From positions 21,638,001-21,702,000 of the forward strand of contig NC_043003.1 of NCBI RefSeq assembly GCF_006345805.1: a stretch of 64,000 nucleotides of DNA. Reading direction: 5' to 3'. Under the pieces are notes generated by a model. It was not told the DNA's origin and ran no database searches. It saw only the letters and a list, made by a program, of their open reading frames with translations. Positions 4,998-59,416 of the stretch are shown here, one piece after another. Each line of letters opens with the position of its first letter. Position 1 is the stretch's first letter. Origin of the DNA: Octopus sinensis. Taxonomy: Eukaryota. The position numbers and the translations under genes were made by a program.

Positions 4998-5075
4998 GCG
5001 GGTTACTGGAAGCAGTGGTGGCTGGTGAGACATACTGCTGGCATGTTGAAGAAGAGGATTGAAGATCTTGCTCTG
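4998..5075 (+). CDS. PHKA: PHKA exon (AGYWKQWWLVRHTAGMLKKRIEDLAL)
   Basis: Splice sites gtttcag| and |gtaact, 26 codons. Resembles PHKA '[26 protein letters not shown]'. Confidence 0.95.
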
Positions 5076-5224
5076 GTAACTATTCTTTTTCCAATATCTA
5101 TAAACATTCTAAAACTATCATGAAGTACAAGGAATACATGATGTTTATGAATGCACATATATACATTGAAGATCTGAGCCTGAACATGATTGCAGTCAAA
5201 TGTATGGAACCAGTAAAACTATCC

Positions 5225-6310
5225 TACTACAGACCAGGTTTGTAGTAAGGGTGGATGCTCTGAGAGTGTAGCTGCTAGAGAAAGAATAACCTGGGAAAAG
5301 TTCAGGGAGCTCCTACCTCTGCTGGCAACTAAGGGCCTCTCATTCTTGATGAAAGGTAGACTGTATGATGCATGTGTGTGAACTGCCATGCTACATGGCA
5401 GTGAAACATGGACCATGACTGCTGAGGACATGCGTAGGCTTGAAAGAAATAAAGCTAGTATGATCCGCTGGATGTGTAATGCCAGTGTGCATACACAACA
5501 GATTGTAAGCATGCTGAGAAAAATGTTGGACATAAGAAGCCTCAAATGACTGCTGGTATGGTCATGTGTTATGTATGGATGAGGAGAGCTGTGTGAGGAA
5601 ATGCCATATCCTAACTGTAAAAGGAACCTCTGGAAGAGGTAGGCCCAGGAAGACATGGAATGAGATGGTGAAGCATGACCTTTGAACGTTGGGCCTCACA
5701 GAGGCAATGACAGGAGACCGAGAACTTTGGAGATATGCTGTGACTGAGAAGACCCAACAACTAAAGTGAGATCATAGGCATGGCCAATGCCAGTGTTGCA
5801 TGTCTGGCCCATTTTAAAAGTACCCTTGATGCATTGGACAATATGATATGCTTGAAAAGACCTGGTGAGTCAAGTAAAACCAAAATCATAGCCATGGCCA
5901 GTGCCACGTGACTGGCTTCTGCACCAGTGGCATATAAGACACACTATCTGAACATGGTCAATGCCAGGTTCACCTGACTGGCTCCCATGCTGGTGGCACA
6001 TAAAAACCTCCATCTGAACGTGGTTGATGCCAGTGCCCCCTGACTGGCTCCTGTGCCAGTGGTACATAAAAAGCACCATCCAAATATGATTGATGCCAGG
6101 GCTGCCAGACTGGCTCATGTGCCGGTGGCACATAAAAAGCACCCACTACACTCTTGGAGTGGTTGGCATTAGGAAGGGCATCCAGCTGTAGAAACATTGC
6201 CAGATCAGATTGGAGCCTGGTGCAGCCCACTGGCTTTCCAGATCAGTCAAACCGTCCAACCCATGCCAGCATGGAAAACAGATGTTAAATAATGATGATT
6301 ATTATTATTC
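5225..6310 (+). mobile_element. 5'-truncated RTE-clade LINE: RT C-terminal region, 3' UTR with ~54-bp tandem repeats, (GAT/TAT)n tail
   Basis: Reads KGRLYDACV*TAMLHGSETWTMTAEDMRRLERNKASMIRWMCN with stops. Continues into repeat units and the tail ...aacccatgccagcatggaaaacagatgttaaataatgatg. Confidence 0.8.
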
Positions 6311-7081
6311 AACATAAATTCCTTTATGGATATTTTTTGAATAGTTTTTTGGATAGTTTTACTGGTTCCATGCATATATATTACACTAATACACCTTCTT
6401 GTTGTCTTCATCTATAAGCCTGTCTTCATCTATAAATTTGACAGTCATGGTTTGAATGCTTTTAACCTTATTACTATATTTCTTTTCACCTAATCAGAAC
6501 TGATCTGAGTCTAAATAATTCATCCCACTTTTTCTCATGCTAAGAAGCTGTCCAATTCAGCTCTAAATTATATTATTATTAATGATAATAATAAATAAAT
6601 AAATAATATCAAAAAAGGTGTGGCTTTGCAACTGCATGGCATCTTGGGCAAGTATCTTCAGTTAAGTTTCAGGCTGACCAATGCCTTGTAAATGAATTTA
6701 GTAGATGGAAACTGTGTGAAAGCTCATTGTATGTGTGTGTTTATGCTTGTCCCCCACCACTGCTTGACAACCAGTGTTGGTTTGTTTATATCCCTTTAAC
6801 TTAGCAATTTGGCAATGTGACTAGAATAAATACCAGACTTACAGTACAAGAATTGATATGTTTGGCTAAACCCTTCAAGGCAGAGCCCAAGCATGGCCAC
6901 GGTCTAATGACTGAAATGAGTGAAAGCAAAATATTTAGGGATTCTCATTCCCATCTTTTCTTAGTCTTCTTTGTCTACATAGAGTATCTATTGATATTTC
7001 ACTAATTCCCATTTGCAATAAATCACAATGTCCATGTTGTATTGTTCTATTTGTTAAAAACTGCCTCTGCTCTGTTTGTAG

Positions 7082-7158
7082 GCTGCCACAGATCTTTTGG
7101 TACGTCAGAAGCAGTTGTCTGTGGGTCTTCCTCCCGACCGAGAGAAGATCATCACCAG
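7082..7158 (+). CDS. PHKA: PHKA exon (AATDLLVRQKQLSVGLPPDREKIITS)
   Basis: Splice sites ttgtag| and |gtatgt. Matches PHKA '[26 protein letters not shown]'. Phase 0 in, phase 2 out. Confidence 0.96.
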
Positions 7159-7498
7159 GTATGTTCCAACAAGGTCATCTTTGTCTTTCGTCCTTCTAGA
7201 TCGAGTAAATAAAATACCAGTGAGGCACTAGGGGTCAATATAGTCAATTAATTCCCTCTCCTCAAAATTGTTGGCCATCTGTCTGATTAAGAAACAACTT
7301 TTATAGTTTAAATTGAAATTTGTGTTTGGATGTTGAGTTTTGGCTTTGTGTAGTCACATTGAATATTGTACCCCGAGATACACTGTCTATAAAAACAAAA
7401 AGCATAAACACAATGGACACAGCTGGAATGCTTTTAATGATAGTCTTATTCTGTCAAATGATGGCATTAGAAAGGGCATCCAGCCCTAGAAACCAAGC

Positions 7499-7501
7499 CT
7501 T

Positions 7502-7590
<89 letters not shown>
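7499..7590. repeat. (CT)n microsatellite
   Basis: About 45 CT units read directly from the sequence. Confidence 0.97.
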
Positions 7591-7593
<3 letters not shown>

Positions 7594-7610
7594 ATCCTTA
7601 CTTGATAGTA

Positions 7611-7897
7611 AACAATTGCAGCGTGGAAGGTGTTTATAAGCCATTTAAGAAACACACAAAAACTGTTATATTCACTTCAACATTTAAATTTAATTTGCCA
7701 AAATATTTTTGCCACTTTGAGGCTGTGACATGTTCACTGATTAAATTCCATGTTGCGCGGAATTTTGTCAGTGGACAGGTTGCAGTCTCAAAGCGATGAA
7801 AATATTTTGGCAAATTAAATTCAAATGTTGAAGTGAATCTAACGGTTTTTGTGTGTTTCTTAAATCGCTTATAAACACCTTCCACGCTGCAATTGTT
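7611..7897. repeat. ~287-bp fold-back palindrome (MITE-like)
   Basis: aacaattgcagcgtggaaggtgtttataag... pairs with ...cttataaacaccttccacgctgcaattgtt. The ~100-bp outer arms are near perfect. Confidence 0.9.
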
Positions 7898-7985
7898 TTT
7901 GTTCTAGCACACGATCTCAGATCAGGTCACTTGCTATGCAAGTACATTTCCGTAATTACTTGATAGTCTTTTGTTTCTATTTCAG

Positions 7986-8064
7986 TCCCTTGCCACCAGA
8001 TGAACTTTCTGAAATGATATATGAATCTTGTGGAGAAGATCTGAGTACTGCTGCTTTGACACAG
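7986..8064 (+). CDS. PHKA: PHKA exon (PLPPDELSEMIYESCGEDLSTAALTQ)
   Basis: Splice sites atttcag| and |gtcagt. Matches '[26 protein letters not shown]'. Phase 2 in, phase 0 out. Confidence 0.96.
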
Positions 8065-9539
8065 GTCAGTTTTTTGTTTGTTTCTATTTTTGTTGAGGAG
8101 TGGGGGGACTTTTTTCTTTTTTCCTATTTTTTTATCAAATTATATGCAGGTATGGCTGTGTGATTAAGAAGCTTGCTTCCCAACCACATGGTTTCAAGTT
8201 CGGGCCCACACTGCATGCTACCTTAGGCAAGTGTTTTCTACCATAACCTCAGGCTGACCAAAGCCTTTTGAGTAGTGAATCTCATAGGCAGAAACTGAAA
8301 TAAGTTTTTGTGTGTGCATGTGTGTATCTAATTGTAATGGCATCACATGGAAATTTTTCCAATAATTGTCACTGTTCCCCCGGTTAGGGGGAAATATTAC
8401 TTTGCTTGGAAACAAGGGAGGACATCCAGAAAATCTGCCTCAATAAACTTCAAGTGACCCATGCAAGCCTGGAAAAGTGGACATTAAAACAATGATGATG
8501 ATGATGGGTGTTATCCAATGCATCTATCCTTTTTGTTTCAAATGACAGGGTGTTTTGAGGTAGCTTAACTGCTATTTCTTACAGTTTGGACAGTTGCATA
8601 GAGGCTCCTTTGTTGTTCCATGTTTAAAATTAAACACTGAACACAAATTCCTATAGCAATGCTAGAACTTTTGACCATTAGGTCTGTAAATTGACAGTTT
8701 AATTGAAATGTGCGGAATTCTTATGGCTTTGCTTGAAATTTCGGAATTCTCGCTTCACCATGGCATATGAAATTAGCCAAATTTACAAATGTTACTAAAT
8801 TACTTGTGCCAACTTGGACCCAATGGTGCTTCTACATGGTTGCACACCTTGCTAGAACTAGCAGTCAGATCTACCTCACATCACACCCAACTGTCTTTAC
8901 AAAAAGGGAACATTAGATAATAAGCACCCACTACACTCTCAGAGTGGTTGGCATTAGGAAGGGAATCCAGCTGTAGAAACTCTGCCAGATCAGATTGGAG
9001 CCTGGTGCAGCCATCTGGTTCGCCAGTTCTCAGTCAAATCGTCCAACCCATGCTAGCATGGAAAGCGGATGTTAAACAATGATGATGATCTCAGAAAAAG
9101 ACAGGACAATTGTTGCTGGAATGTCTTTGAGCATAAGTTTCTCAACTAGCCCTTTCCCACTAAAATTTCTAACCTTGTGCCAAAATTTGAAACAGGTACC
9201 AAGCTGGCAGACCTGTTAGCATGCCAGACAAAATGTTTAGTTGCATTTCTTCTGGCATTATGTTCTGAGTTCAAATTCCACTGAAGTTGACTTTACTTTT
9301 TATCCTGCTGGGGTCGATAAAATAAGTACCAGTTGAGTACTGGGGTTAATGTAATTGACTAGCTCCCATCCCTGAAATTGCCAGTCTTGTGCCAAAATTT
9401 GAAACCATTATTATTATTGTTGATGGGGGCAATAATCAACAATAAATGGTGGTTCACCCTGAAAAGGGTGATGAGAATAGAATTGATAAGGTTTAGCAAA
9501 AGGACTAGCAGTAGAAAGAAACAGAGTAGAAGCAGGGCT

Positions 9540-10050
9540 GGTCAAAAAGTTAGATGAGGCTTTTAGAAAAGGTATCACAACCAATGTGCTCACAACGAGA
9601 TTGGCACTTGAGCAATTCTTCAATGCAAAACACAAAGGTTGCATTGTCAGAGCTAAAGCATGAACACTTAGACACGGAGGAATGAAAGCCTGAGTGGCAG
9701 AGGCATGGTGTGGCAATAAATCTACGATCCAGTCCTTGTCAGACCACAACAGGCAAGTTATAACTGATCTGAGACAGATGTGTGCAGTCTTTCAGCGACG
9801 CTCTGCACAACTGTTCCGTATCAGCAGTGAGCTGGGTCACAGGATGGATTTCATGTCCTACCTCAAGCGGCTCTTGGCAACGGGAGTGGAGTGCTGCAAA
9901 GGACCAATAACAGCCTTTGAAATACTGTAAGCAATGGCTAGCTGCACAAGGGGTAAATTGCCTGGTTTGGCTGATCTGCCCTACAAGCTCTACGCTTACA
10001 TGCCAGACTTATTCGATGACCTCTTAGCAAATGTTTACGGCAAATGTTTA
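9540..10050 (+). mobile_element. Degraded L1/Tx1-like LINE ORF2 fragment (between endonuclease and RT)
   Basis: Reads KGCIVRAK...KGPITAFEIL*AMASCTRGKLPGLADLPYKLY, a decayed form of the GKSPGxDGLPxExY motif. Confidence 0.7.
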
Positions 10051-10266
10051 CTGTAACCAGACTCTGCCTAGCTAAAACGGGCTGTATAGGACTTTATGAG
10101 GCAATGTTTTAATGTTAGATTGCCTGTGAACCCCCTTTTACTAACTTCTTACAACTCATAGGGGTACAGTGTACCTATTCTAAAAATTGTGTTTCATATA
10201 GAAATATTTAATCTTTGAAATAAATAGGAAATTTATAATTCTAATTGATTTTTTTGTTTTCTCCAG

Positions 10267-10396
10267 GAATTGTTAATGTATTTGGCTATGTTTATCCGCA
10301 CTGAGCCGCAGCTTTTCAAAGAAATGTTACGTCTCCGTGTGGGGCTTATCATCCAGGTGATGGCCTCAGAATTGGCCAGGACTCTCAAATGTACAG
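10267..10396 (+). CDS. PHKA: PHKA exon ([43 protein letters not shown])
   Basis: Splice sites ttttctccag| and |gtacgc. Strongly resembles '[43 protein letters not shown]'. Confidence 0.97.
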
Positions 10397-12205: not shown

Positions 12206-12304
12206 GAGAAGAAGCTTCTGATCACCTGTTGAATTTGAGTCCATTTGAAATGAAAACACTTCTTCATCATATTCTTAGTGGGAAAGAATTTGTAATTAGC
12301 GCAG
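12206..12304 (+). CDS. PHKA: PHKA exon ([33 protein letters not shown])
   Basis: Acceptor tgaag| and donor G|gtgagt. Contains the conserved [11 protein letters not shown] motif. Phase 1 in, phase 1 out. Confidence 0.97.
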
Positions 12305-15142: not shown

Positions 15143-15160
15143 GAAAAAAAGACAAAAAGG
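15143..15160 (+). CDS. PHKA: Candidate 18-nt microexon of PHKA (GKKDKK)
   Basis: ttttctgctcccag|GAAAAAAAGACAAAAAGG|gtaagc. Consensus splice sites, length a multiple of 3, phase 1-1, open in the frame set by the upstream exon. No transcript evidence available. Confidence 0.75.
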
Positions 15161-22102: not shown

Positions 22103-22137
<35 letters not shown>

Positions 22138-28512: not shown

Positions 28513-28586
28513 AACGTACTGCCCCTGAAGACACTCATGACCGAATACGGCTTTCATTCACGGCCAAGGACAAACACGAAGAGAAA
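28513..28586 (+). CDS. PHKA: Candidate alternative exon X of PHKA (ERTAPEDTHDRIRLSFTAKDKHEEK); possible longer donor at 28616
   Basis: Starts at the first AG after a 220-nt AG-free pyrimidine-rich zone. Open in the required phase-1 frame. Donor AAA|gtattt gives 74 nt; AAG|gttact gives 104 nt. Both are phase 0 out. Confidence 0.62.
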
Positions 28587-28937
28587 GTATTTGCACGACT
28601 CAGTCGCTCTTATAAGGTTACTACTTCATCTTAATCCTGTTGTATTTAAATCTTAACCTTTTTATTACCATATTTCTCTTGAAATAAAATGCCTTTGTTT
28701 CAGTTAGTTTGGAATTAATGAAGAATTCTGTAAAATAATTTCATCATTATTAAACCAGTGTTTGGAACAAATTAATCTGAAATTTTGATGAAAGGTATTA
28801 ATTTAGATAATTTTTTAATTGGAAATTTGTATTATAGTCTCAGGCAGGTTGGTATCAAAAAGGTTAGTCTTTGTTTTCAATCTCGTTTTTTTCACAAGCA
28901 ATCAAAATCAGAAAATTAATTAATTTACAGATTTGTA

Positions 28938-29411
28938 TTAACCCTTTCATTACTGTATTTATTTTGAGATGCTCTGTGTTTCTTTCAATTATTTTAAATA
29001 TAACAAAGAATTTAGTAAAATAACTTTGTTATCATTAAGCTAGTGTTAGGAAAATAAATTGTGTCTAAGGTTTGGTGGAAGATTTTAATTCAAAACTTAT
29101 GAAAACATGACATTTGTACTACAGAGGTGGTTTCAGTCGGGTTAGTACCAAAAGGGTTAAGAATTGTTTCTCTATTATATATTTTAATTCTTTTGTTACT
29201 GTATTTATTTTGAGATGCTCTGTGTTTCTTTCAGTTATTTTAAATATAACAAAGAATTAGTAAAATAACTTAGTTATCATTCAGCTAGTGTTAGGAACAT
29301 AAATTGTGACTAAGATTTGGTGGAAGATTTTAATTCAAATCTTATGAGAACAAGACAATTATACTAAAGAGCCAGAGCCAGTTTTAGCCGTGTTGGTAAT
29401 GAAAGGGTTAA
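28938..29411. mobile_element. Two adjacent copies of the piggyBac-type MITE
   Basis: Direct repeats of ~225 bp separated by ~23 bp, each bounded by TTAA. Confidence 0.7.
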
Positions 29412-32400
29412 TTAATGTTTTCTAAAATAGTTCTGGTAAATTCTAAGATTCTATGTTGGCAAACTTTTCACAGTTTCAAAGGCAAGATAGCAAGGTTGCA
29501 TGAGGAGTTACTTTTATATCAGCTATTGCTGATAAAAACTCTAACAAATACCAAATGATGACATTGTGTTGAATGCTTCCTTGAAAATAATAATTTTAAC
29601 CCTTTAACTTCAAATTTAAAATTTATGGTTATTCCTGTAATGATGTTAAATATCTACCAAAAAATAGAATTGGTATTTCTTGCAAGTTACACTGCCTCGA
29701 TAAACTTGATATAGTTCAATGAAAAATAATTCCAAACATAATATTCCTCATTGAAAGATAGATTTGTATAAAAATTGCTTTCCGCAGTTAAAGTTAATGA
29801 AATTTTGAGTGGATATCTCTGATTTCTGCAATAAAACAGTTAAAATAACTTAAAAAGAAAATATCTAAGTATTTTATTTTATTGTTCTATTCTGTCTCAT
29901 TTGAATAACAAACAGCCTAACAGGCAGCCTTTCACAAAGTTTCTGTCCATAAAATTTCATTCGCATGCCTTTGGTTGATCTGAAGTGTTATTTGTCCAAG
30001 AAGCAGTGCAGCAGGTTTGAACCTAAGACTTTGTGACTGAGAAGTGAACTTCTTAACTATTTGATCATGTTGTGCATTATTGCATATAAACAATAATAAT
30101 GCTAAATTGCTCGCATTTTAGTTATATATATATATTATAATTATATTTATATTATTATTATTATCTATACAAAATTTTCCCTGCAGGCCACTTGATATGA
30201 TCATTATTCTAAATAATGGATTTATCCTTGAGATAGATATATATATATATATATAAGATGAGGTGCCCCTGGGCAGAGCCCAGTGGTTGGAACCAATTAA
30301 AAGTAAAGGGAAACAAACAGTCCTATCCACTTCCATTATGTGTTTGTAGATATGTATGTATATATAATGTAAAATAATTTGTTTTTATACCAAACATTAT
30401 CCCTGCCTTAAATCAGCTGAAAAAGACCAGTATTTATTTTCTCAAGCATATTGATGATTTAGGCATTTTAGGGTTAATTAATAGTATTTGTTCCATGTCA
30501 CACATTTCAGAATGTTAACCCTGTCTTGAATGACTTTATTCTTTAATGGTCAAGGACCAGTAAAACAATAATGTACTATATATCAGACAATCTTCTGTCT
30601 CCTCTCCCTTCTCCCTCCTATTGAAGTACCCATGATACCTATTTCTTTATCATACTCTAGCCTCTCATCATCTGGCATTACTCACTCCTCAGTTCAGGGG
30701 CCTTATCTTGTAAGATATTTAGTGACCTCACTGCTGCAGGTGCCTCATAAAAAAGCACCTAAAGTGCTTGGCATTCAGAAGGACATCCAGCTACAGAAAC
30801 CATGCCAAAGCAGACAGCAGAGCCTCATGCAGTCTTCTGACTTGCCAACTCCTTTCAAACCATTTGATGGTGCAGCCCTCAGGGTCATTAAGGCATACAA
30901 GGCACCACACCACATCAAGAATTAGACCTTATGTTAGAAGATGGTATTTTGAACATAATTTAACATGAAATTTTGTTGCAAGGTTTAAATCACTTTGAAA
31001 CAGGAAGTTTGCATCATAGGACCAAAGCCAATCTTGGGTAGGTTACTATCAAAGGGTTTAAAAGTTTATCATACATAGTTATTCTCTATTGATATTTTCT
31101 ACTTCTCATAGGCCAGTAACATACTTAGTTCCAACTTCTAGCCCAAGATAATTTATTGGAAGAGGTCACCAAATTAATATTTAATGTCACTTTATCACTG
31201 AAAACCAGATTAGTTTTGTTGATGTTAAATCAGGAATAATTAATAAATAATAATTAGGAAATTGTTGCATGCATATGAATTCAAGGCAAGGTTTATGAGC
31301 GTAAAGTTGTTCTCAATACTTATTTCTAATAAATTACCTCTTTTTTTTTTTTTATTTCTTAGCATTTGTGTTTAGAGAAAATGAAAATATTTCCCTTATA
31401 ACTTTGTAAATGCTGCAATTATTTTTAAAAATATGTATATCATAATTCTATCTTCAATTTTCTTGACTCTCTAACTTCCATGTTATATATTAACTATGTT
31501 ACTATTTGTTTCTTTATACTCTTTTACTGGTTCCACCCACTGGGTTCTGGTCATAGTGAGGCACCTCATCTGAATATTAAATGTATTTTTGACTTTTAGT
31601 TGCAGATTTATATTTATTATGTTTCTGTTGATGTTGTTGTTCATTTGAATTTCAAATTTAATCCTTGAGGGTCATCAGGTTGATTTGTCTACAGCTTACT
31701 ATTTTTTTTTTACTTTTATGGCAAGAAAGATGAGCTGATTATTTCAAGAATATTTATGTTTTATCTCTGTCTATTGAGATTTGGACATTTTTTTTTGCAG
31801 GATGTTGAATAATAATAGCCTTTTTATATTGTTTTGCATATCATAAAAATTGTTTCTGTTTTCTTCAATGTAGAAATGTCTCAAAGCCTTATTTCCAAAG
31901 AGCTAAAACCACAAACCAATTTCTAATGAAGTGAAAATTTATGGAAACTTTAAAAAATATTTGTTGTGTATCAGAACTCAATATGTTTCCAATGTTTAAT
32001 CTCTCTCTGTGTCTCTCAAACAAATATATATGTATATGTTTTTGTGTGTTCCTTTAATATATCTTTTTTTGTATATTTTACTTATTTATTTGAGTTTTTT
32101 TTTATTTAGCTTATTTGTGGAGTCAACATTTTCAAAGTTCATTCTTCACCTTTTAGTCTATTTTCAAAGATAAATTCACTAATATAGTTTTGTAATTTTG
32201 AAGTCAATTCACTGAGATTAACTTTCTGTTAGGTTGAGCATAGCCAATGGCCAGTCCAGAGTTTCAGTCATTAATCTTATACAGAAGCAATTTTATCTAT
32301 CATAACAGAAAAAAAAATTCTAATGAGAAACATTTTCTTTGACCAAAAATGAAGAGGAAAGGCTTTTTAGATTTAAGTTCTTGGACCTAGAAAGTCGTTG

Positions 32401-32550
32401 AGGATATTCTATGAATCTATCATGAGGCTTTTGAATCACTATTATTTTAAAAGATTCTTTAAATGCTTACAGAAAATGAAAAATGACAGGTAGTGAGTAT
32501 GATAACTATATAACAAACAGATGCACGAGTCAAGGCTTCATGTCCTAGAC

Positions 32551-32863
32551 CAGGACTGGCCAACCTGAGGCCCATGGACCACATGCAGCTCGCAGACTTT
32601 TATCTTGCGGCCCACTTGATACTTCCTTGAAATGGGCTTATGTAAACAAACATTTAAAAACTTTTATCAAAAATTAAAAATTTTACTGAAAAGTAAAAAA
32701 GAAAGATACTACTGTTTTTGCAACGATAATATTTCATTCATTCATTATTGTAATAATAGCATAAGAAAAAAAATGCTTTCAATTCTGTCAGTATATAAGC
32801 GGCCCTTAGAAAACTTTCTGTGGTTAAAGTGGCCTGCAATGTAATTTGAGTTGGCCTGGTCTG
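32551..32863. mobile_element. hAT-type MITE
   Basis: TIRs caggactggccaac and (reverse complement) cagaccaggccaac. 8-bp TSD tcctagac/tcctagat. Confidence 0.8.
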
Positions 32864-33897
32864 TCCTAGATCATTTAATTGTGGCAGCTTTATTTAGTGG
32901 AACTCTCTTAAACAAACATAGATGGCTGCATTTTTGTTGATAACTCACAACATGACCCAGCTGAATATACACTTATCTACTACAAACAGAACTGAACTAA
33001 CTTTTATCTCAAATATAGAAAGCTAAATCAAAATAGTAATGGATACCATACGTTGCTTGTGTAAGATAGATTTACACATTTAACTGGTTTGGTTTACTCA
33101 AGAAATTATAGTAATTTAACGCATACACAAGTAGTAAATGTGTTTGTAACTCTCTGTTGTTATTACAGTGTATTCTTATATAAAGTGGTTGATGTAAGTT
33201 CTAAAATAAGCCTCCATCTATGCATTTTCTCCACTCACTGTTCCTGAGAGGGTTGTGGGTAAGAATTAGAGCCCTTGGTCACCACTTATATAAAGCCCTC
33301 TCAGAAGCAACTGTCTACACTCTCTGGATGGACTCTCAAGTGTGACCAAATGAGACTATGGATATTATTCAACCATCTTGTTTTCAGTCTACACCTGGAG
33401 GTCTCTTGTCCATTTGCTTGGCTTGAAGAATCCATCTTGTGATTCTTCACTATGACTTTCTAATCATATGTCCATAATACAAGATCTATGACCTCCCAAT
33501 GCAGAGAAATAGCAGCCTTACATGGAGAGACCCCATGATTTCCTAGCTATGTACCCTGTCGAATAACATTACTAATTTTCAAGTTATATTTTAATAGTAC
33601 TTCAAATTTCAGGGAAATCTCTTCAAAATTTCATTACACCTTTACTGGTTTCAACTTCTGGTCCATGGCCATGCTGGGGCATTGTCATAAATGAAATAAC
33701 TTTGGGTTTACTACTCTGAATTGACACCTTAGCTTTCACCAGTAGTTACAGCACACTTTTTGAATTGCTTCTATCTTTAAAAACACTCAATTTCTAAACT
33801 TTTATTTTATTTGCAGCTGGTCATAAAATATGACCCAATTTTACTTTTTTTTATTTTATATTTTCATTTCTATGTTGTCTCTCCTTTTGCTATAAAG

Positions 33898-33971
33898 ACA
33901 AACACAATGATGAAAGTATTGGGCGAGAAATTGTTCAGATTGGAAGGCGCCGTGAATCTGTATTTATTCAG
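33898..33971 (+). CDS. PHKA: Candidate alternative exon Y of PHKA (DKHNDESIGREIVQIGRRRESVFIQ)
   Basis: Polypyrimidine tract plus tataaag| acceptor and CAG|gtattt donor. 74 nt, phase 1 in and phase 0 out, bridging exons 12304 and 41132. Encodes an R-R-x-S motif in the position of the multiphosphorylation domain. Confidence 0.75.
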
Positions 33972-36900
33972 GTATTTCTCTAGTTAATCAAAGCATTGTG
34001 TTCTGGTTTGAAGACGCTCTGTTCAAAGAATTTTACATACTGAGACTGTGGTCGAATGGAAGGAAACAGATTTTGTCTTGTATTTATATTTAGAAGGAAT
34101 CCTATTTTGAATATGTCTAAAAAAAAAAAAAGATACAATATTTCTAATAATTTATTTATAATCAGAAATAATTGCATGAAATTTTGGTTATCCTGGCATA
34201 AAATTGAATTTTATTAGTTTTAGAAAAACTATAGTGTTATAGAATGAAATTAATGGAAATGGGCCAACAATGAAAATTTGAAATCCTTTGAGCATATCAA
34301 GAGTTATAGTTCCATTATAAAGGCTTTTGAAGAAACAAAACTGGAGGAGAAAACCAGAAAACATATAGATACATATTTTTGTTTGTTATATGAAGAAATG
34401 GGCTGAAAGACAGGACAAATATAGGAAAGATTATGGAGAAAAGTAATGAGTTATGCTGAGTATTATTCCTACTTCCAGTCTAATGTTATTTCATTATAGA
34501 CAAGGGAATTTTTGAGGAGGGGGCCTTGCAACCAGATAGATGGTAGAAGCATTGTAGAAGCTGAAGGAGAGTATATTTTAAAAAAAGAACTTTGTTTATC
34601 TTAATTTTGAAAAATAAAAGAAGTTTTAAAAAAACGCTTTAGTTGTGGGTCGACCCAATATATATATATATATATATAATCACAAAGTATAGAGTATTCT
34701 AGATCCTTTACAGTCAATCTTACCAATCAGTTTTGCACTGGGTATCCGGTTACTGGTCAGTTATGTATTAACTGTGTGCCCATCAGTGATGGCAGGTATG
34801 GAAAAAAGAGTATATCTATATATAATAGTGCTATTTCATTTGACCCATATAACAAGAATATTCTATTAATATGGAGGTCATTCTATTGACATAGATAGAT
34901 TGAACAATTGATATATAAAAAAAAAGACCCATTAAAGGAATTATTATGCCATGATATGGTTATCTTCATATTTCTTAGATGGGTTTTGTAAAATGGGAAG
35001 TAATGCTTTTTTTCAGATCTTTAAACAGTTTATCCAAAAAGAAAAAAAAAACTTCTTTGTTGTTCAACAACTAAAAGCCAGATGTTATTTCCATTTATCT
35101 TAAAATTACTTACCGTTTTATTTTAAGCAAAAGAGAAAGAAAATGCAAGTTCAAATATTTGTCATCACTTTGTGCAAGTTCAAATATTTGCTATCACTAC
35201 TTGACTTGTAAAACTGTCTGTAGTAGAGGCATCTCTCCAGTTTTCCAATTAAGTAGTTAGTGTTAAAAGCATGTGCCTTTTATTACCAGACTAAATCAGA
35301 GGATTGGTAGCTTTACTAAACCATTCATCTGTTGAAATTTGATAAAGATCTGCTGCTGTTGTGCCTTAGAGCTATTAACAATAGCACTGATTCAGAAGGA
35401 ATTCACAAACTCAAGAATTTTCAATACCTTGTCTATGATTAGACTGAAAACAATACTTGGACCAAGAATAAAAATTGTGACTTGTTCAGTCTAGGGGAAA
35501 CATAAAACTCTACAAGGCAGTGTTAGAACTGAACTATAAATAAATAAATAAAATAAGAGATTTAAAAGACTAGTAACTAGTGACAGCAATTCATGAATTA
35601 TTACAACAAGAAGCAGCAGATCAAGATATCAAGCTAGCTTCAGATTGGAGACTTGGTTTGGTCTAATTGTTCACAACAGAGTGAACTTCATCACAATGCA
35701 CTCAAGGGTCAGGTGGTGTTATCAGATAATGACAAAATGAATCTTCCACTTTAAGGGAATCCCTCCTCTTCACTATTAGATTGGAGAGGAAAAGTAATTT
35801 TTGAGTAAGGAAAAATCAACCCCCCCCCAGACAAGTTTGATAGATTAAGACTAGCATACTGCTTCCTGCTTGCTGAGTTTGGTTCCTCCCCTTCACAGGC
35901 TGAAAGTCCACCCTTCCCTTCACTATATCCACAGTTTTTCCTTATAAACCTGTCTATTGAATTAACACCATTATGTGTGAATTTGGTTTCTGTTTTGGGT
36001 GGTGGGAGGGGTTTTTTTTTGTTATTTTTTTTTCTCTATTAAATAATTCATTTGCATTTTATTTAAAGGTTTCTAACTGAGCCATTTATTCTTTTGGTGG
36101 TTGCTGTTGCTGTTATTTTCCCCCCAACCATCGTTGTTCTTTTTCATGTTTATTTCTCAAGTTTATCTTTTTCAACTGCCATTTTGCAGGTTTCACTAAT
36201 AGCCAACCACTCTTATAATATAAGGGGGTCTCTACCTGGTTGCTCACCCAATAAGAAATAGCAGCTAAATATCCCTCATGTTACACGTTAATGTCTTAAA
36301 AACAAAGCAAGGTCACATTGTATAATGTAGGTGTCTAAATGCATGACATCAGAACAAAAAAAGAAAATGGGATGCTCATGGCTGAAATACATTTGATTAT
36401 AGTCCAGCTAGATCAGGGTTGCCTGGGGCTAAACAACAGCTAGTAATATTGCCAGAATTGAACGAATAAAACTAAACTAAATAAATAGGCCAGAGAAGAA
36501 TTCAGTGACCTAATGAATGAAGTGTTGACTTCTTGATTAAATAACTGAGATTTGGCAGTTATTTCTAGCAGATTGAGCAACCTGGTAGAAGTTTCCACAT
36601 CCATATACTAAGTTAATCAATTATAATGCCACCCACCCCTCTTTTCTGGTCTTAGTTCCATAGAGAACAAATAAGTTCTTGAATCAAAATTTGGCTGAGT
36701 AAGGTGAACGTTTACTCAGGCAAATCTAATGCTTAAGAATTCACATCATTTTGAATTAATTATACCCTATGTCATAGTCTTGAGATTTTGCTGATGTGAT
36801 TGTTCATTTTTAGAATGACATTGTAGGATAGGTGTGAGAGGCTGAACCTAACCAGTTTGAACATGAAACTGGTAGAATATTTGGGTTGGATATGGTGAGT

Positions 36901-37380: not shown

Positions 37381-40069
37381 ACTTGGTCGGCTGTACGCAT
37401 GATGATATCTCCCATCAAGCAAGCATAGAGCAGCAAGAAGCAACTTCACTCTACATACATTACTTACTTAAGCACATCACTTCCTATGACATAAAGGCCA
37501 TTGATGGCTCCTTTTTCAGCTTTGCCAGTTGGCTCTGCAGATTCCTTTGGGATTTTGCTTCACTGCATCATATGTTTCCTTGGGAGAAGGCCTTCTTTCA
37601 GGTCTTGTCGGTTTTGAATTGTCATCAATGATTCTGTAACTTTGCATTTTTCTAGGTAGGGGTATTGGTCCTACACATACCCATTTTTACCTCTGGGAAG
37701 AGGTGGTCCATATTAGTCTGGCCTTTATTCTTTGACCTGACCGACATATGAGCTCCTTCACTAGCCTATCTCTCGAGGTCACTGAAGCACATGAGTTACC
37801 ACACTGCAGCAAGGACTGGACTTTGTATACATACAACTGTACATACAAAATTTTGTGCAGTATTATTGAACCTGGAGCTATGTGGTTGTCAAATGAACTT
37901 CTTAATCACGTGCCCAGATCTGATCTCATTTGTGTATGTAAAATCTAAATATATAGAAAAATATCAAAAAAGATGGAAAGCTAGTCCTAGTTAGGATTCA
38001 AACCCCACACCTTCTGCTAACCACCCTCATGCTTTTGCCACTTAAACTTACAACCCATTGCTATTTTCCCTTCAAAATAATCACATAAATTAATGTTGCT
38101 TATGTGATTTTTTTTTCAGCCAGGTACAATTTTTCCCCCCTTTCATGTTTTAATTTTATTATAACTGTTGTTTGTATTATTGAAACAGAGTTTTATCAAG
38201 AAGCTATTTCCAAACTAAATTTTGTATTTGTTTCTTTATTAAAATGTTCATTTTATGTTGATTATATCTTTCAATTAACTGGGATAGCATTAAGCATGTT
38301 ATACATGATCAGTTAGAACTTACCCACCCATCATTCCTGAGCTTCTGTCCCTAATTTCTCTTATATTTGCCTTCTTGTACCTTATGGATACACCCTGGCA
38401 CCTCATCACCATCATCTTTTCTATCCTTCCACTGGGGTAGCAATGTACCTCCTCTCCAGTAAGACACTTGCCCCTGCCTCTCTATCATACTTAAGCCACT
38501 CAACACCTGGCATAAAGCCACTTCCTTCAATATTACATTCTCCCTACACTCAATTGAAGGGCCTTGTCTTGCAAGTTATTTGGTGGTTGATGGCTTCCTT
38601 CTTGAGCCAGTGCCATGAAAAGAGCCTCTGGTATACTCTGTAAAGTGGTTAGCTTTATGAAGGCCATCCATCCATTGAAACCATACCAAACCAGTGCAGA
38701 CATTGGCGCTTGATACTGTTCTCCAGCTTATCAGATCCTGTCGAACCATCCAACCCATGCCAGCATGGAAAACAGATATTAAATAATGATGATGATGATG
38801 GTATATATGAGATTCTCTTGTATATATCATCGTCATCACCTTCATCATTTTACATTTACTTTCCCTTCTATTATGAGTTGGATGGCTTGTCTCTGAATCA
38901 CATTTTATTGGAAGTTACTGTTATCTTAGGCATAGCCAGAGGTGTGACATCCATTGATAGATACCCTTCTTATTACCAACCATTTTACAAGAGGTAACTG
39001 GATGCATTTCATCATAGCTCCAAGTTGTTGTGAGGTTGTCAAGTCCTCAAGTTCTCCCTCTCTACTCAGGGTTCATAGTGACCTTACTAGTGCTGGTGGT
39101 ACGGAAAAAGCATTCAGTACTCACAGTAAAGTGATTGGCATTAGGAAGGGCATCCAGCTGTAGAAACCGTGCTAAAGTAGATATGGAGCATGATGCAGTC
39201 CTTGAGCCCGCTGGAGCCTTCCTGTACCAGCATCGAACACGGACAATAAATATTGATAATGTTAAGGCTAATTGAGATTTTTCAGGAGTTTGCTCCCTTG
39301 TCCCTTCTGAGAATAAATTTTCATTAAAACTAATTATTTTTTTTTTTACCTCATTAGCACTTTAATTTCAGTTATTTAAAAGATCTTTTTATCCCTCATT
39401 TCATACATGGTAGACTGCACATGTAAAAAGTAAAAGTTCCCAATGTTACAATTATCATCACATTATTTTAGTATCCATTTCTCTATGCTTGTATGGATTA
39501 GACAAGTCTTTTCCAGTACATCATCAGAAAAAGATTCATCTACTTGTTCTGGCTCTTTATCATCTTTTCATTGAGGTTTAACCTTTTGTCATCCACCTTC
39601 ATTGCTTCTTATGCCTTCCTCAGTTTTCCTCTTCTTCAGGTTCTTTCCACTTGGATCTCCTGACACTTCCGTAACCAGATGTCATCTCCACTTCCATACA
39701 CATCATATGTCTGTCTCCTCTTTCACACACAGCATCTGATTCCTCTAATACAGTTTTTCTCTCTCAGCTTTTGTTTTTTTATAATTTTATTCTAACTAAT
39801 AAAGAAATTATAACCAAATTTATGTTTTGATTCAATAACTTCCTCTATTTTGACTTATAAATACATAGTTCACTTCTAGAGGGGAGAAATTGTATGAACA
39901 TTAAGTTTTATTAAAATAACTTATGAACTTATTAAAATAACTTATTATGTTCCATAATAACCATGTATTTATATATTGTTCAAAAATACTTAATATTTAA
40001 AAACGATAACCAAATATTTCTGTTATTGTTATCATTGTCATTGTTGTTGCTATTATCATTATTATTATT

Positions 40070-41131: not shown

Positions 41132-41299
41132 TCTGGACCGGCAATTGAGATAACTCAACCTGTGGATGATACTGAGGAACAAGGCGAAGAAGATGACGAC
41201 GATCGCCAGGGCCAGTGGTTACGACGACGGAGGCTAGATGGGGCCCTTAACAGAGTACCTGTTGGATTCTATGAGAAACTTTGGAAAATCTTACAAAGA
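41132..41299 (+). CDS. PHKA: PHKA exon ([56 protein letters not shown])
   Basis: Splice sites ttcttag| and |gtaagt. Contains the hallmark RQGQW(L/Q)[17 protein letters not shown]. Confidence 0.98.
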
Positions 41300-41650: not shown

Positions 41651-41704
41651 GTCGAAACCCTGTCTATTGCCAACAACACTCTGGAGACAATGCTAACCAG
41701 AGAA
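41651..41704 (+). CDS. PHKA: PHKA exon (VETLSIANNTLETMLTRE)
   Basis: Splice sites ctctgtag| and |gtaagg, 18 codons, phase 0-0. Same length and position as PHKA 'CHGLSVEGFVLPSSTTRE'. Confidence 0.93.
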
Positions 41705-42314
41705 GTAAGGATTTTTTTTTCATTCTTTATTTGTAATCTATATTTTTTTTAAATTTGTAATTACATTTTAATTATAAAACATTGTCTGAGTATAATAATT
41801 CAGTTTATAATTAATCACACTATTGTTTTAAGAATTATATTTATTATATAAAATGTATTATTCTTTATGAAATTAGTCATCATCATCATCATCATCATTT
41901 AGCGTCCACTTTCCATGCTAGCATGGGTTGGACATGTTCTGAATAATTCTGCTGTTTCCATGAGTGAACAGTAATAGTTAGATTAGTAGACCTAACACAC
42001 CACACTGTTTAACACCATTTGGTCAAACCAATTAGAGAACTTCCTTTGTAAATGGTGGCCAAATACTTCTTATATCAAATTCCACACAATAAAATACACC
42101 GGATAATGGTAATACAAGATGGTCATGGCTGGAAGGCTTATGTCTATCCATATCTTCTTTCATCTCTCTCTCTCTCTCTGCTTACCATCTTTCTCCTCCT
42201 CCTCTCTTCCCACCTAATATATAACTTCTTGCAAATGTATCAGTCTGTCTAATTATGTAGTTAATTGCTTCTCTTTCTATTCACCTATTCATATTCATCT
42301 TTCTAACTACACAG

Positions 42315-42524
42315 ATGACATCTGGAGAGTTCAAATTCGCCCTGCAAGTCGAAACAGTTCTAAACATGATTCCACAGCCAGAGTACCGACAACTGATGGT
42401 AGAGGGTATGATAGTTCTAACCACACTGCTTGATGTTGACCCCAACTGTCGGATCAAACTTCACCGTACTATCTATATTGACAAAATTGTACAAGAGGCC
42501 AACCAGATTTACCTAAAAGAACAG
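42315..42524 (+). CDS. PHKA: PHKA exon ([30 protein letters not shown]...YLKEQ)
   Basis: Splice sites tacacag| and |gtcagt, 70 codons. Matches '[30 protein letters not shown]'. Confidence 0.98.
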
Positions 42525-42649
42525 GTCAGTATTTTACTGCCTTCTGGTTCTATGATACACAACATCTAATTTTAAAGTATATATATTTAAATCAAACAAT
42601 TTCATTAAAATTTGAATAAGAACCTTGTGCTAAAGTTATGATAAAGTAT

Positions 42650-43055
42650 AGGTGCAGGAGTGGCTGTGTGGTAAGTAGCTTGCTTACCAACCACATGGTT
42701 CTGGATTTAGTCCTACTTCATGGCACCTTGGGCAAGTGTCTTCTACTATAGTCTTGGGCCAACCAAAGCCTTGTGAGTGGATTTGGTAGATAGAAACTGA
42801 AAGAAGCCCGTTGTGTATATGTATATATATATGTGTATATGTGTTTGTGTGTCTGTGTTTTTCCCCAAAAAATCGCTTGACAACCGATGCTGGTGTGTTT
42901 ACGTCCCTGTAACTTAGCGGTTTGGCAAAAGAGACCGATAGAATAAGTACTAGGCTTACAAAGAATAAGTCCTGGGGTCAATTTGCTTAACTAAAGGCGG
43001 TGCTCCAGCATGGCCGCAGTCAAATGACTGAAACACGTAAAAGAGAGTAAAAGGG
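42650..43055 (+). mobile_element. SINE family A, near full-length copy
   Basis: tRNA-like head ggagtggctgtgtggtaagtagcttgcttaccaaccacatggttctggatttagtcc, CORE-like block, microsatellite, and tail ...cagtcaaatgactgaaac. Confidence 0.85.
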
Positions 43056-43799
43056 TATACAAATATTGCTTCCAGCATTATTCTTCCATGTATCTCTGTG
43101 GGTTGGCTGGCAATGTTTCATGATGAGATGTCCTTCCATTTACCAACTCTAACCTGTTTTTTAAATTTGGTATTTTTATTTTTCTGGTTCATCAACTTAC
43201 ATAAACTACCAGACTGGAGAGCATATTGTTATGGTATATATAAACAAAGTAGCTGAGTTGGCCAAACATTGTGAGTGTGAAAACATGCAGAAATAAACAC
43301 ACTCCCAACTTGAGGCTATTATAAAAATCACTTGCCCAAGATGCCCACAGCAAGATGTAATCTAATATCTTTTGATTAACAAAAGTAAACTTCGCAATCA
43401 TGTAGAAATAAGCACACACAAAAAGATACACATGAGAAATTTCTGTCTACAAGTTTCACTCACAAGATACTGGTGAACCTGAGACTATAATACAAGGCAC
43501 TCAGCTAAGTTGCCCAGCATGAGATATAATCCAAAACCTTTTGGTTGACAAAATAAACTTCATAACAACACAGCCATAACTGCACCTTACAACATACCTG
43601 TGCCTGATTAATAACATAAAAGGTAATTGTTTAACACCAGTTTTATCATTACTGAAACGGCTTTTGATCATAGGTCTACCAGTTAGAATTTGTTGTCGGC
43701 TTCTCTTTGTTTCCCAGTATTTCTTTCTTCATTTGTGCTTCCTCATTTAAGTTGGTACTTCTGTTTGCTCGTATGACCAATTTTTGCATGGAACAATTG

Positions 43800-44195
43800 A
43801 CAATTGTCCACAGAGATTACATCTAATGGTCAGCAAAGGCTTGGTTGGATTTGGCAGGTCTTTCATTGTAGCCATTTATCTTCTTCATATCTTCAACAAT
43901 GTTCTTCAAAATGTACTGCTATGTCAACAGCCTTGCACTCCTTGAATGGTCAAAAGCCAACAGTACTGAGGCCATCTTCAATGAACATTGTCTTAGATGG
44001 GCAGGTCATGTCCACCACATGAATAGCACCGGACTGCCACATCAAATCCTCAACAGCAAACTCAGCACTGGCAAGAATATCTTCAGCTGCCCCATGCATT
44101 GCTACATGGGCCAACTGAAACAGACAATGAAAAGTACCAACATTGACTCTGAATCCTAGGAGCAACATGTAGAAGACAGAACATTGTTTGACATG
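43800..44195 (+). mobile_element. RTE/BovB-like LINE C-terminal fragment
   Basis: ORF 43899-44159 contains LRWAGHVHHMNSTGLPHQILNSKLSTGK. Confidence 0.75.
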
Positions 44196-44290
44196 CATGG
44201 CACCTTGGGCAAGTGTCTTCAACTATAGCCTCGGGCTGACCAAAGCCTTGTGAGTGGATTTGGTAGACGGAAACTGAAAGAAGCCCATTG

Positions 44291-44327
<37 letters not shown>

Positions 44328-44666
44328 ATGTGTGTATATGTTTGTGTGTCTGTGTTTGTCCCCACAACATCGCTTGACATCCGATGCTGGTGTGTTTACG
44401 TCTCTGTCACTTAGCAGTTCAGCAAGAGAGACCAATAGAATAAGTACTAGGCTTCCAAAGAATAAGTCCTGGGGTCGATTTGCTTGACTAAAGGCGGTGC
44501 TCCAGCATGGCTGCAGTCAACTGACTGAAACAAAAAATAAAAAGAAAAGAAAGAATCTCAATAGAAGCAGTTTAACTGAGGTTAAAGAACGATAACCAAA
44601 TCATAAGACTAGATTTAACTTATTCAAAGCTAAACTAAAATTTTTTTTCTTTCTCTTTCATTTCAG

Positions 44667-44843
44667 AAAATGCCAGAAGACGTACAAAAGCAATTCATGG
44701 GAGCAGCTGGTATCTGCCAGCATTTTTATGACAGTGCACCAAGTGGACGATATGGCACACTATCTTACATGTGTCGAGCCCTAGCCATTATCCTTCACCT
44801 TCCTGTTGATTCAGACAATGGACTTGAGTGTGCTATTAGTTAA
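44667..44843 (+). CDS. PHKA: PHKA last coding exon (...[20 protein letters not shown]...GLECAIS*)
   Basis: Acceptor catttcag|. Contains the conserved YDSAPSGR(Y/F)GT motif and ends CAIS-TAA, a CaaX prenylation motif as in PhK alpha (CAMQ). Confidence 0.98.
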
Positions 44844-55601: not shown

Positions 55602-55658
55602 CTCATGGTGCTCCCACAGAGATTTTCTATGTGAAACTGTAAACAGTGTAATTCCAAG
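55602..55658 (-). CDS. ABCD3: ABCD3 exon with H-switch (LGITLFTVSHRKSLWEHHE)
   Basis: Splice sites tttttcag| and |gtaata, 19 codons. Confidence 0.97.

Positions 55659-59360: not shown

Positions 59361-59416
<56 letters not shown>

What the first reader, a model, noticed from the sequence alone, without database searches (positions are those of the whole stretch)
28513..33971. Candidate mutually exclusive exon pair that switches a PKA site on or off in phosphorylase kinase alpha
Seen in the sequence: two exon-like segments 5.3 kb apart (X 28513-28586 and Y 33898-33971) are both 74 nt, phase 1 in and phase 0 out, and open in the required frame. Both have TAAAG acceptors and GTATTT donors. The flanking exons (12304 phase 1, 41132 phase 0) need exactly one: skipping both gives V-W-T-G-N-TGA, and including both shifts the frame to a TAA inside the 41132 exon. 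Only Y encodes a PKA consensus site (RRRES). Both contain 'gacaaacac...gaaagtatt' (DKH), hinting at partial duplication. Established knowledge: the multiphosphorylation region just upstream of RQGQW.RRRRLDG is alternatively spliced in vertebrate PhK alpha. Inference: a tissue-specific either/or switch for cAMP control of glycogenolysis in this mollusc.
Basis: partly seen in the sequence, partly recalled or inferred. Interest (0 to 1): 0.85.

Follow-up and report, generated by a model that had tools for sequence, protein, structure and literature searches.

The report
Octopus PhK-alpha mutually exclusive exon pair
The two segments are real, mutually exclusive exons of the octopus phosphorylase kinase alpha gene that swap one phosphorylation cassette for another, but both isoforms are already in public annotation, one exon is 104 nt rather than 74, and it carries phosphorylation-type sites of its own.

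Summary
The window holds the 3' part of the Octopus vulgaris/sinensis phosphorylase kinase alpha (PHKA-like) gene.

- **Isoform tally.** Of 30 cephalopod proteins and assembled transcripts, 21 carry X only and 9 carry Y only. None carries both or neither.
- **Transcript support.** Cuttlefish mRNA contigs show the orthologous junctions exactly.
- **Conservation.** Argonauta conserves both exons inside otherwise unalignable introns. The Pacific oyster has the same up / X (104 nt) / Y (62 nt) / down layout and the same phases. Bivalves and gastropods show the same X-like or Y-like choice.

Three corrections to the finding:
- X ends at 28616 (104 nt, donor AAG|GTTACT), not 28586. No sequence uses the 74-nt form, and the extra 30 nt are under coding constraint.
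- X is not free of phosphorylation sites. Its extension VFARLSRS aligns with the vertebrate PKA site Ser1018 (VEFRRLSIS), and that serine is invariant in the 13 molluscan X exons I aligned. Y carries an optimal R-R-x-S-V site.
- Profile comparison does not support the duplication hint.

All four isoform combinations (with or without an 18-nt microexon at 15143-15160) are already in RefSeq/GenBank. Tissue specificity and actual phosphorylation are untested. Modest interest.

The parts
12206..12304 (+). Constitutive upstream exon (…[32 protein letters not shown]), ends in phase 1
   Evidence: Splice sites and translation. tblastn of homologues. Exact match to annotated Octopus isoforms.
15143..15160 (+). 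Optional 18-nt microexon (GKKDKK), phase 1 to 1, combinable with X or Y
   Evidence: Sequence cag|GAAAAAAAGACAAAAAGG|gtaagc. Present in O. vulgaris, O. sinensis and O. bimaculoides isoforms with X or with Y. The cuttlefish counterpart GKKRKT is in transcript contigs L003 and L005.
28513..28616 (+). Exon X, 104 nt, phase 1 to 0: ERTAPEDTHDRIRLSFTAKDKHEEKVFARLSRSYK. Weak acceptor tract and weak donor AAG|GTTACT.
   Evidence: Exact match to annotated isoforms. Argonauta orthologue is 104 nt and 87% identical, with 11 synonymous and 2 non-synonymous codon changes. The oyster orthologue is also 104 nt. Cuttlefish mRNA junction.
28587..28592 (+). It lies inside the coding sequence (codons V-F) and no sequence shows it used.
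   Evidence: No X-short junction among 540 retrieved proteins. The downstream 30 nt show only synonymous change against Argonauta.
33898..33971 (+). Exon Y, 74 nt, phase 1 to 0: DKHNDESIGREIVQIGRRRESVFIQ, with an R-R-x-S-V PKA-type motif
   Evidence: Exact match to annotated Y isoforms. Argonauta orthologue is 74 nt with the same splice sites. Cuttlefish transcripts L003 and L005. Y-like exons occur in bivalves and gastropods.
33835..33897 (+). Intron sequence upstream of Y, conserved with Argonauta (T-rich tract and acceptor)
   Evidence: The blastn block 33835-34036 matches L001 10753-10958. It is one of the few collinear non-repeat matches outside exons.
33972..34036 (+). Intron sequence downstream of Y, conserved with Argonauta. 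Candidate splicing-regulatory element (inferred).
   Evidence: X has no comparable flank conservation.
41132..41299 (+). Constitutive downstream exon ([56 protein letters not shown]), phase 0 to 0
4998..10396 (+). Four further upstream coding exons of the same gene: 4998-5075, 7082-7158, 7986-8064, 10267-10396
   Evidence: Exact match to annotated proteins.
41651..44843 (+). Last three coding exons: 41651-41704, 42315-42524, 44667-44843 (stop codon; C-terminal CaaX box CAIS)

Best explanation
X (28513-28616, 104 nt) and Y (33898-33971, 74 nt) are a mutually exclusive exon pair in the Octopus vulgaris/sinensis phosphorylase kinase alpha gene. Both enter in phase 1 and leave in phase 0. A transcript with exactly one of them stays in frame. 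A transcript with both or neither hits a premature stop in the next exon and would presumably be removed by nonsense-mediated decay; that last step is inferred.

The pair encodes alternative versions of the disordered multiphosphorylation loop just before the acidic stretch and the [19 protein letters not shown] segment.
- X is the ancestral-type cassette. It carries RIRLSF and FARLSRS, and the second is the positional counterpart of vertebrate Ser1018.
- Y is a shorter cassette with one optimal PKA-type site (RRRESV).

Splice choice, together with an independent 18-nt basic microexon (GKKDKK), therefore sets which phospho-acceptor sites the alpha subunit offers. Presumably this tunes how cAMP and other basophilic kinases modulate the enzyme. 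That functional step is inferred, not shown.

The arrangement predates the split of cephalopods, bivalves and gastropods.
For: Frame arithmetic.

Annotation and tally:
- My exon models for X, mic+X, Y and mic+Y each match annotated O. vulgaris/sinensis proteins exactly over 381-397 C-terminal residues.
- Of 30 cephalopod sequences (three Octopus species, Acanthosepion pharaonis and cuttlefish transcript contigs), 21 have X only, 9 have Y only, and none has both, neither or X-short.

Transcripts:
- Intron-free Logan transcript contigs translate end to end. L004 reads up-X-dn. L003 and L005 read up-microexon-Y-dn.
- Their junctions fall at the bases orthologous to 12304, 28616, 33898, 33971 and 41132.

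Conservation in Argonauta hians:
- Between X and the downstream exon, X and Y are the only collinear conserved non-repeat blocks. Lengths and AG/GT sites are the same.
- Codon changes are 11 synonymous to 2 non-synonymous in X and 6 to 6 in Y. Third-position changes predominate.

Conservation beyond cephalopods:
- The Magallana gigas locus has up, three optional small exons, X-like (104 nt, phase 1 to 0), Y-like (62 nt, phase 1 to 0) and dn in the same order.
- Same-species X-like and Y-like isoforms occur in M. gigas, Mytilus edulis, Ruditapes philippinarum and Biomphalaria glabrata. Haliotis asinina's Y-like VGAQIVQMSRKKSSVVSQ is plainly homologous to the octopus Y.

Phospho-sites and gene identity:
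- In the alignment to human PHKA1 (E 2e-103), VFARLSRS lies on VEFRRLSIS. Ser1018 is the PKA site and the segment is disordered (PMC11950179).
- The FARLS serine is invariant in 13 molluscan X exons.
Against: - No read-level RNA-seq was available, so relative usage, tissue specificity and rare both/neither transcripts are unknown.
- Most Octopus isoforms are computed gene models (RefSeq XP_ and GenBank CAI records). Only the cuttlefish contigs are direct transcript assemblies, and short-read assemblies can be chimeric between isoforms.
- X and Y show no profile-level homology (hhalign probability 0.9%), so this is not a textbook duplicated exon pair.
- Phosphorylation of either cassette is inferred from motifs alone. 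ARLS has Arg only at P-2 and may not be a PKA site at all.
- No conserved docking/selector RNA structure was found (a weak test).
Confidence: 0.88

Rival explanations
1. One reading: two 74-nt exons (X ending at 28586), of which only Y carries a PKA site, so that splicing turns cAMP control on or off.
For: The 28586 GTATTT is a formally usable donor, conserved in Argonauta. It keeps the frame. Strict R-R-x-S occurs only in Y.
Against: No protein or transcript shows the ...KHEEK|SGP junction. The 30-nt extension is coding: all three differences are synonymous, conservation ends just past 28616, and the oyster exon is also 104 nt. The extension aligns to the vertebrate PKA site Ser1018, and its serine is invariant in the 13 aligned molluscan X exons.
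Confidence: 0.05
2. Y is a non-productive or artefactual exon (a poison exon or an annotation artefact), and X is effectively constitutive.
For: X-containing sequences outnumber Y-containing ones 21 to 9. Y evolves faster, with 6 synonymous to 6 non-synonymous changes. The Argonauta and Acanthosepion genome annotations list only X forms.
Against: Inclusion of Y in place of X is in frame. The open frame, length class, phase and basic-Ser motif are conserved from cephalopods to bivalves and gastropods. Two independent cuttlefish transcript assemblies from different runs carry it within a full-length ORF.
Confidence: 0.04
3. X and Y can be co-included through an undetected frame-restoring exon or alternative splice site between them.
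For: The 5.3-kb intron between X and Y was not exhaustively screened for unconserved microexons.
Against: The X-Y interval is only about 690 nt in Argonauta and about 540 nt in oyster, with no further conserved block. None of the retrieved cephalopod isoforms contains both, and I saw none among the other molluscan isoforms inspected by eye.
Confidence: 0.02

Closest known systems
Differential mRNA processing of the multiphosphorylation domain of vertebrate PhK alpha-M/alpha-L (PHKA1/PHKA2; Wüllrich et al. 1993, cited as ref. 28 in PMC11950179)
   Same: Same protein, and the same disordered loop between ...LSGKEF and RQGQW.RRRRLDG. Alternative splicing changes the set of phospho-acceptor sites. 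Among my hits, one vertebrate-like fragment carries an ...NRRASADEQ... segment that another lacks (P0126 versus P0130).
   Different: I could not read the 1993 paper, so the vertebrate exon mechanics rest on its title and my recollection. Here the event is a frame-enforced either/or choice between two non-homologous exons plus a microexon, in molluscs.
Annotated isoforms of this very gene: Octopus sinensis XP_029638693.1 and XP_029638692.1 (X) and XP_036360516.1 (Y); O. bimaculoides XP_014776196.1 (X) and XP_052825242.1 and XP_052825241.1 (Y); O. vulgaris CAI9725364-73
   Same: Identical C-terminal sequences to the window's exon models in all four combinations.
   Different: They are database models without any published description of the exon pair, its conservation or its function. 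My literature searches found none.
Classical mutually exclusive exon clusters, as defined by Pillmann et al. 2011 (PMC3228551): similar length, same phase and splice sites, sequence homology
   Same: Adjacent exons with the same phase in and out, GT-AG sites, a length difference that is a multiple of three, and never used together.
   Different: No detectable homology between X and Y. Exclusivity is explained by the reading frame rather than by a demonstrated RNA structure or steric constraint. That paper itself notes that non-homologous pairs exist and are missed by such criteria (its Drosophila PhK-gamma example).

Membership tests
Phosphorylase kinase alpha regulatory subunit (PHKA) | GH15-like N-terminal domain plus KPBB_C C-terminal domain | tested here: met
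   Full-length isoforms whose C-termini are identical to the window models carry PF00723 and PF19292 (precomputed).
Phosphorylase kinase alpha regulatory subunit (PHKA) | Closer to alpha than to beta subunit | tested here: met
   Human PHKA1 chain 8jfk_M scores 349 bits (E 2e-103, one stretch over residues 3-374). PHKB scores 155 bits.
Phosphorylase kinase alpha regulatory subunit (PHKA) | Multiphosphorylation loop followed by the [18 protein letters not shown] segment, and a C-terminal CaaX box | tested here: met
   [23 protein letters not shown] lies in exon 41132-41299. The C-terminus is ...ECAIS*. That CaaX farnesylation is a feature of PhK alpha/beta is from my own knowledge.
Mutually exclusive exon pair | Adjacent internal exons with compatible splice sites and identical phase in and out | tested here: met
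   Both are AG...GT and phase 1 to 0. The same holds in Argonauta and oyster.
Mutually exclusive exon pair | Transcripts contain exactly one of the two | tested here: met
   21 X-only and 9 Y-only among 30 cephalopod sequences, with none carrying both or neither. Cuttlefish mRNA contigs agree. Read-level data were not available.
Mutually exclusive exon pair | Exons homologous and of similar length (tandem-duplication origin; Pillmann et al. criteria) | tested here: not met
   Lengths are 104 versus 74 nt (oyster 104 versus 62). hhalign of the X-exon against the Y-exon alignment gives probability 0.9%. There is only a 23-nt local similarity within Octopus. This criterion defines duplicated clusters, not mutual exclusivity as such.
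PKA phosphorylation site (R-R-x-S/T-hydrophobic) | Consensus motif present in Y | tested here: met
   RRRESV (Octopus), RRRQSV (Argonauta), TRRVSV (cuttlefish). Basic-Ser motifs occur in most molluscan Y-like exons.
PKA phosphorylation site (R-R-x-S/T-hydrophobic) | Consensus motif absent from X | tested here: inconclusive
   X lacks strict R-R-x-S but has RIRLSF and ARLSRS. The second aligns to human FRRLS(1018)IS. Other molluscs have RRLSV or RRLSI at the first position.
PKA phosphorylation site (R-R-x-S/T-hydrophobic) | Actually phosphorylated by PKA | not testable with these tools
   Needs kinase assays or phosphoproteomics.

The most novel reading that the evidence does not exclude
This would be a frame-enforced either/or switch between two non-homologous exons in the PhK alpha regulatory loop, conserved since before the divergence of cephalopods, bivalves and gastropods. 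It would change the kinase specificity of the loop, from an optimal PKA site in Y to an ancestral single-Arg/PKC-like pair of sites in X. It would be used in a tissue-specific way, coordinated with an upstream basic microexon; in cuttlefish transcripts the microexon was in 2 of 2 Y contigs and 0 of 4 X contigs. That would give molluscs isoform-specific hormonal control of glycogenolysis analogous to vertebrate muscle and liver PHKA isoforms.
Probability: 0.4. Interest if true: 0.45.

Novelty: already known. Interest (0 to 1): 0.28.

Why it matters
This is a clean, very old example of alternative splicing rewiring the phosphorylation input of a central metabolic kinase. It parallels the known splicing hotspot in the same loop of vertebrate PhK alpha. 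For annotation, it confirms that the RefSeq isoforms reflect a conserved, frame-enforced exon choice rather than prediction noise, and it fixes the true boundary of exon X. For physiology, it points to a testable difference in cAMP/PKA responsiveness between PhK isoforms in cephalopod tissues. It does not open a new class of mechanism.

Tried and rejected
- **Protein searches with short queries.** 148-aa and 416-aa queries returned only hits of about 0.55-1.75 times the query length, so full-length isoforms were invisible. A 1209-aa chimeric query (oyster N-terminus, cuttlefish middle, window C-terminus) solved this.
- **Exhaustive representative search.** It gave no cephalopod entries, because 50% clustering hides them.
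- **Exact look-up of the oyster Y isoform.** It failed because only the longest product per gene is indexed. The longest isoform worked.
- **X-Y homology.** The hhalign comparison was negative. The Octopus-only 23-nt similarity is not conserved in Argonauta's Y, so I do not treat duplication as shown.
- **Docking/selector RNA pairing between X and Y.** The search returned only AT-rich chance-like inverted repeats.
- **Wüllrich et al. 1993.** The paper is not held in the library.
- **Tissue of origin.** Looking up the three run accessions found nothing.
- **Downstream region.** tblastx against Argonauta mostly returned repeats.
Full report
**What is in the window**

The + strand carries the 3' part of a phosphorylase kinase alpha (PHKA-type) gene. 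I mapped its coding exons from splice sites, open frames and homology:
- 4998-5075, 7082-7158, 7986-8064 and 10267-10396
- 12206-12304 (called 'up' below)
- an 18-nt microexon at 15143-15160
- X at 28513-28616 and Y at 33898-33971
- 41132-41299 (called 'dn' below)
- 41651-41704, 42315-42524 and 44667-44843 (stop codon; C-terminus ...ECAIS)

The assembled C-terminal protein matches human PHKA1 (8jfk_M) at E 2e-103 over nearly its whole length. PHKB matches much more weakly, at 155 bits. My four exon models (X, microexon+X, Y, microexon+Y) are each identical over 381-397 residues to the C-termini of annotated Octopus vulgaris and O. sinensis proteins. The window is therefore from one of these two species.

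**Checking the observation**

Up+dn gives ...VISAVWTGN*. Up+X+Y+dn shifts the frame into a TAA in the dn exon. Up+X+dn and up+Y+dn are both open.

The 3' end of X is wrong. The donor in use is 28616 (AAG|GTTACT), which makes X 104 nt, not 74.
- No retrieved protein (540 in all) has the ...KHEEK|SGP junction that a 28586 donor would give.
- In cuttlefish mRNA contig L004, the base orthologous to 28616 abuts the base orthologous to 41132.
- Against Argonauta, all three nucleotide differences within 28587-28616 are synonymous, and conservation ends 10 nt after 28616.
- The oyster orthologue of X is also exactly 104 nt, with a similar AAG|GTTTCT donor.

The features 'both 74 nt' and 'both GTATTT donors' are therefore coincidental. 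The phase logic still holds, because 104 nt and 74 nt differ by 30.

**Are the exons real and mutually exclusive?**

Yes. Four lines of evidence agree.

1. *Annotation and tally.* Thirty cephalopod sequences cover the region: O. vulgaris, O. sinensis, O. bimaculoides, Acanthosepion pharaonis and cuttlefish transcript assemblies. Of these, 21 contain X only and 9 contain Y only. None has both, neither or X-short. The microexon occurs with either exon.
2. *Transcripts.* Three Logan contigs of 4.6-4.9 kb from three different sequencing runs translate without interruption into 1093-1197-aa proteins. L004 reads up-X-dn. L003 and L005 read up-microexon(GKKRKT)-Y-dn. Their junctions fall exactly at the positions orthologous to my splice sites.
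3. *Conservation in cephalopods.* I compared the window with the Argonauta hians locus L001. Apart from interspersed repeats, the only collinear blocks between 12 kb and 45 kb are X, Y and the downstream exons.
   - X and Y keep their lengths (104 and 74 nt) and their AG/GT sites.
   - Codon changes are 11 synonymous to 2 non-synonymous in X, and 6 to 6 in Y.
   - Y, but not X, has conserved intron flanks of about 60 nt upstream and at least 65 nt downstream. Such flanks are typical of regulated exons (my own knowledge).
4. *Conservation beyond cephalopods.* The Magallana gigas locus has the same order: up, three optional small exons, X-like (104 nt), Y-like (62 nt), dn. Both exons run phase 1 to 0, so the same frame rule applies there. 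Same-species isoforms carrying either an X-like or a Y-like segment occur in M. gigas, Mytilus edulis, Ruditapes philippinarum and Biomphalaria glabrata. Haliotis asinina's Y-like VGAQIVQMSRKKSSVVSQ is plainly homologous to the octopus IGREIVQIGRRRESVFIQ. The pair thus predates the divergence of these three molluscan classes.

**What the exons encode**

Both lie in the loop between ...LSGKEF and [13 protein letters not shown]. In human PhK this is the multiphosphorylation segment, about 80 residues long. It is flexible, invisible in cryo-EM and adjacent to a predicted calmodulin-binding region. In rabbit, PKA phosphorylates Ser1018 of this segment (PMC11950179).

- *X.* HMMER aligns the X extension ...EKVFARLSRSYK to human ...QVEFRRLSISAES, placing the FARLS serine on Ser1018. 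Across the 13 molluscan X-like exons I aligned, that serine, the preceding alanine and an upstream glutamate are invariant. X also carries RIRLSF, which appears as RRLSV or RRLSI in some other molluscs. The arthropod and annelid sequences I retrieved have only an X-like arrangement, so X looks like the ancestral cassette.
- *Y.* Y carries one optimal R-R-x-S-hydrophobic motif, conserved as RRRESV, RRRQSV and TRRVSV in Octopus, Argonauta and cuttlefish. Most molluscan Y-like exons have a basic-Ser motif.

The splice choice therefore exchanges phospho-cassettes. It does not switch a unique PKA site on or off. X has Arg only at P-2 of the conserved serine, followed by basic residues, so it may prefer a different basophilic kinase. 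That is my inference from consensus motifs, and nothing here tests phosphorylation.

**Mechanism of exclusivity**

Shown: co-inclusion or double skipping introduces a premature stop in the dn exon, in both octopus and oyster.

Inferred: such transcripts are removed by nonsense-mediated decay.

- I found no support for steric exclusion. The X-Y intron is 5.3 kb in octopus, about 690 nt in Argonauta and about 540 nt in oyster.
- I found no support for a docking/selector RNA structure either; only AT-rich, chance-like inverted repeats turned up (a weak test).
- X has a purine-rich, poor acceptor tract and a weak donor. Y has a better tract plus conserved flanks. Both patterns are consistent with regulated use, but no regulator can be named.

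**Origin**

Window 28570-28591 and 33898-33920 share 20 of 23 positions, and only 1 of 2000 shuffles reaches that score. However, Argonauta's Y lacks the ACAAACAC part. A profile-profile comparison of molluscan X against Y exons finds nothing (probability 0.9%). I leave the origin open.

**Comparison and novelty**

The closest known case is differential mRNA processing of the multiphosphorylation domain in vertebrate alpha-M and alpha-L. I know it only from its citation, because the paper is not held. The exact octopus isoforms are already public, for example:
- XP_029638693.1 and XP_036360516.1 in O. sinensis
- XP_014776196.1 and XP_052825242.1 in O. bimaculoides
- CAI9725364-73 in O. vulgaris

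My searches found no paper describing the exon pair, its frame-enforced exclusivity or its conservation across molluscs. I therefore rate it 'already known' at the level of annotation, with a modest unreported evolutionary and functional angle. The run accessions of the cuttlefish contigs could not be traced to tissues.

**Verdict**

The either/or exon pair is real. The finding needs three corrections:
- X is 104 nt, ending at 28616.
- X is not free of phosphorylation sites.
- Duplication is not shown.

Confidence in mutual exclusivity is about 0.9. Confidence in the 'phospho-cassette swap that tunes kinase input' reading is about 0.6. Interest is 0.28.

Noticed in passing
window 15143-15160: An 18-nt basic microexon (GKKDKK, phase 1 to 1) lies just 3' of a (GT)n run. 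It is annotated with either X or Y in Octopus. In cuttlefish transcript contigs its counterpart GKKRKT was in 2 of 2 Y contigs and 0 of 4 X contigs, which hints at coordinated splicing. The oyster has three optional small exons in the same intron (L002 27370-27399, 27622-27669, 28033-28071).
   Followed up: partly
same gene, upstream of the window (seen in proteins P0518 vs P0519, P0534 vs P0375): A second mutually exclusive pair, this one clearly homologous: ...FLD-RHHFFAVLDPQFIVDFMRWEISFLKSNWKATKGRPTLIVVVQPWVL versus ...FLD-NLQFYLPLDNSFLMDNFKSDVETLSHQWRMLGRPVIVFPVSKMML. A Ser/Pro-rich cassette (A)DGSSSKSSSPGSPKTPK is present or absent. Both features occur in Octopus and cuttlefish.
   Followed up: no
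window ~55500-64000, minus strand: A convergent neighbouring gene for an ABCD-type ABC half-transporter. Exon-like ORFs lie at 62271-62540 (Walker A GPNGCGKSSLFR), 61777-62013 and 55560-55811. The same neighbour (ABC_membrane_2 + ABC_tran) lies downstream of PHKA in Argonauta (L001 32618-38448, minus), so synteny is conserved.
   Followed up: partly
window 54605-54958, plus strand: An ORF that resembles the N-terminal DNA-binding part of a mariner-type transposase (…NYGSVESVITEDLGMRWVSAKFVVKLLSADQK…). Judged by eye only.
   Followed up: no
window 17577-17728, 38734-38800, 41867-41933; and 14167-14255, 22135-22241, 42723-42811, 44194-44286: Two families of short interspersed repeats in the PHKA introns. 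Each has many copies in the Argonauta locus as well, at 70-88% identity.
   Followed up: no
window 33972-34036 (and L001 10886-10958): The intron immediately downstream of Y is conserved between Octopus and Argonauta (blocks such as TCAAAGCA, GTGT, TCTGTT.AAA). X has no conserved flanks. No known splicing-factor motif was identified.
   Followed up: partly
pectinid proteins P0476, P0480, P0483 (not in the window): Scallop PHKA proteins have a much longer loop here, with three repeated (D)RRKSS / RRMS motifs in place of a simple X-like or Y-like segment.
   Followed up: no
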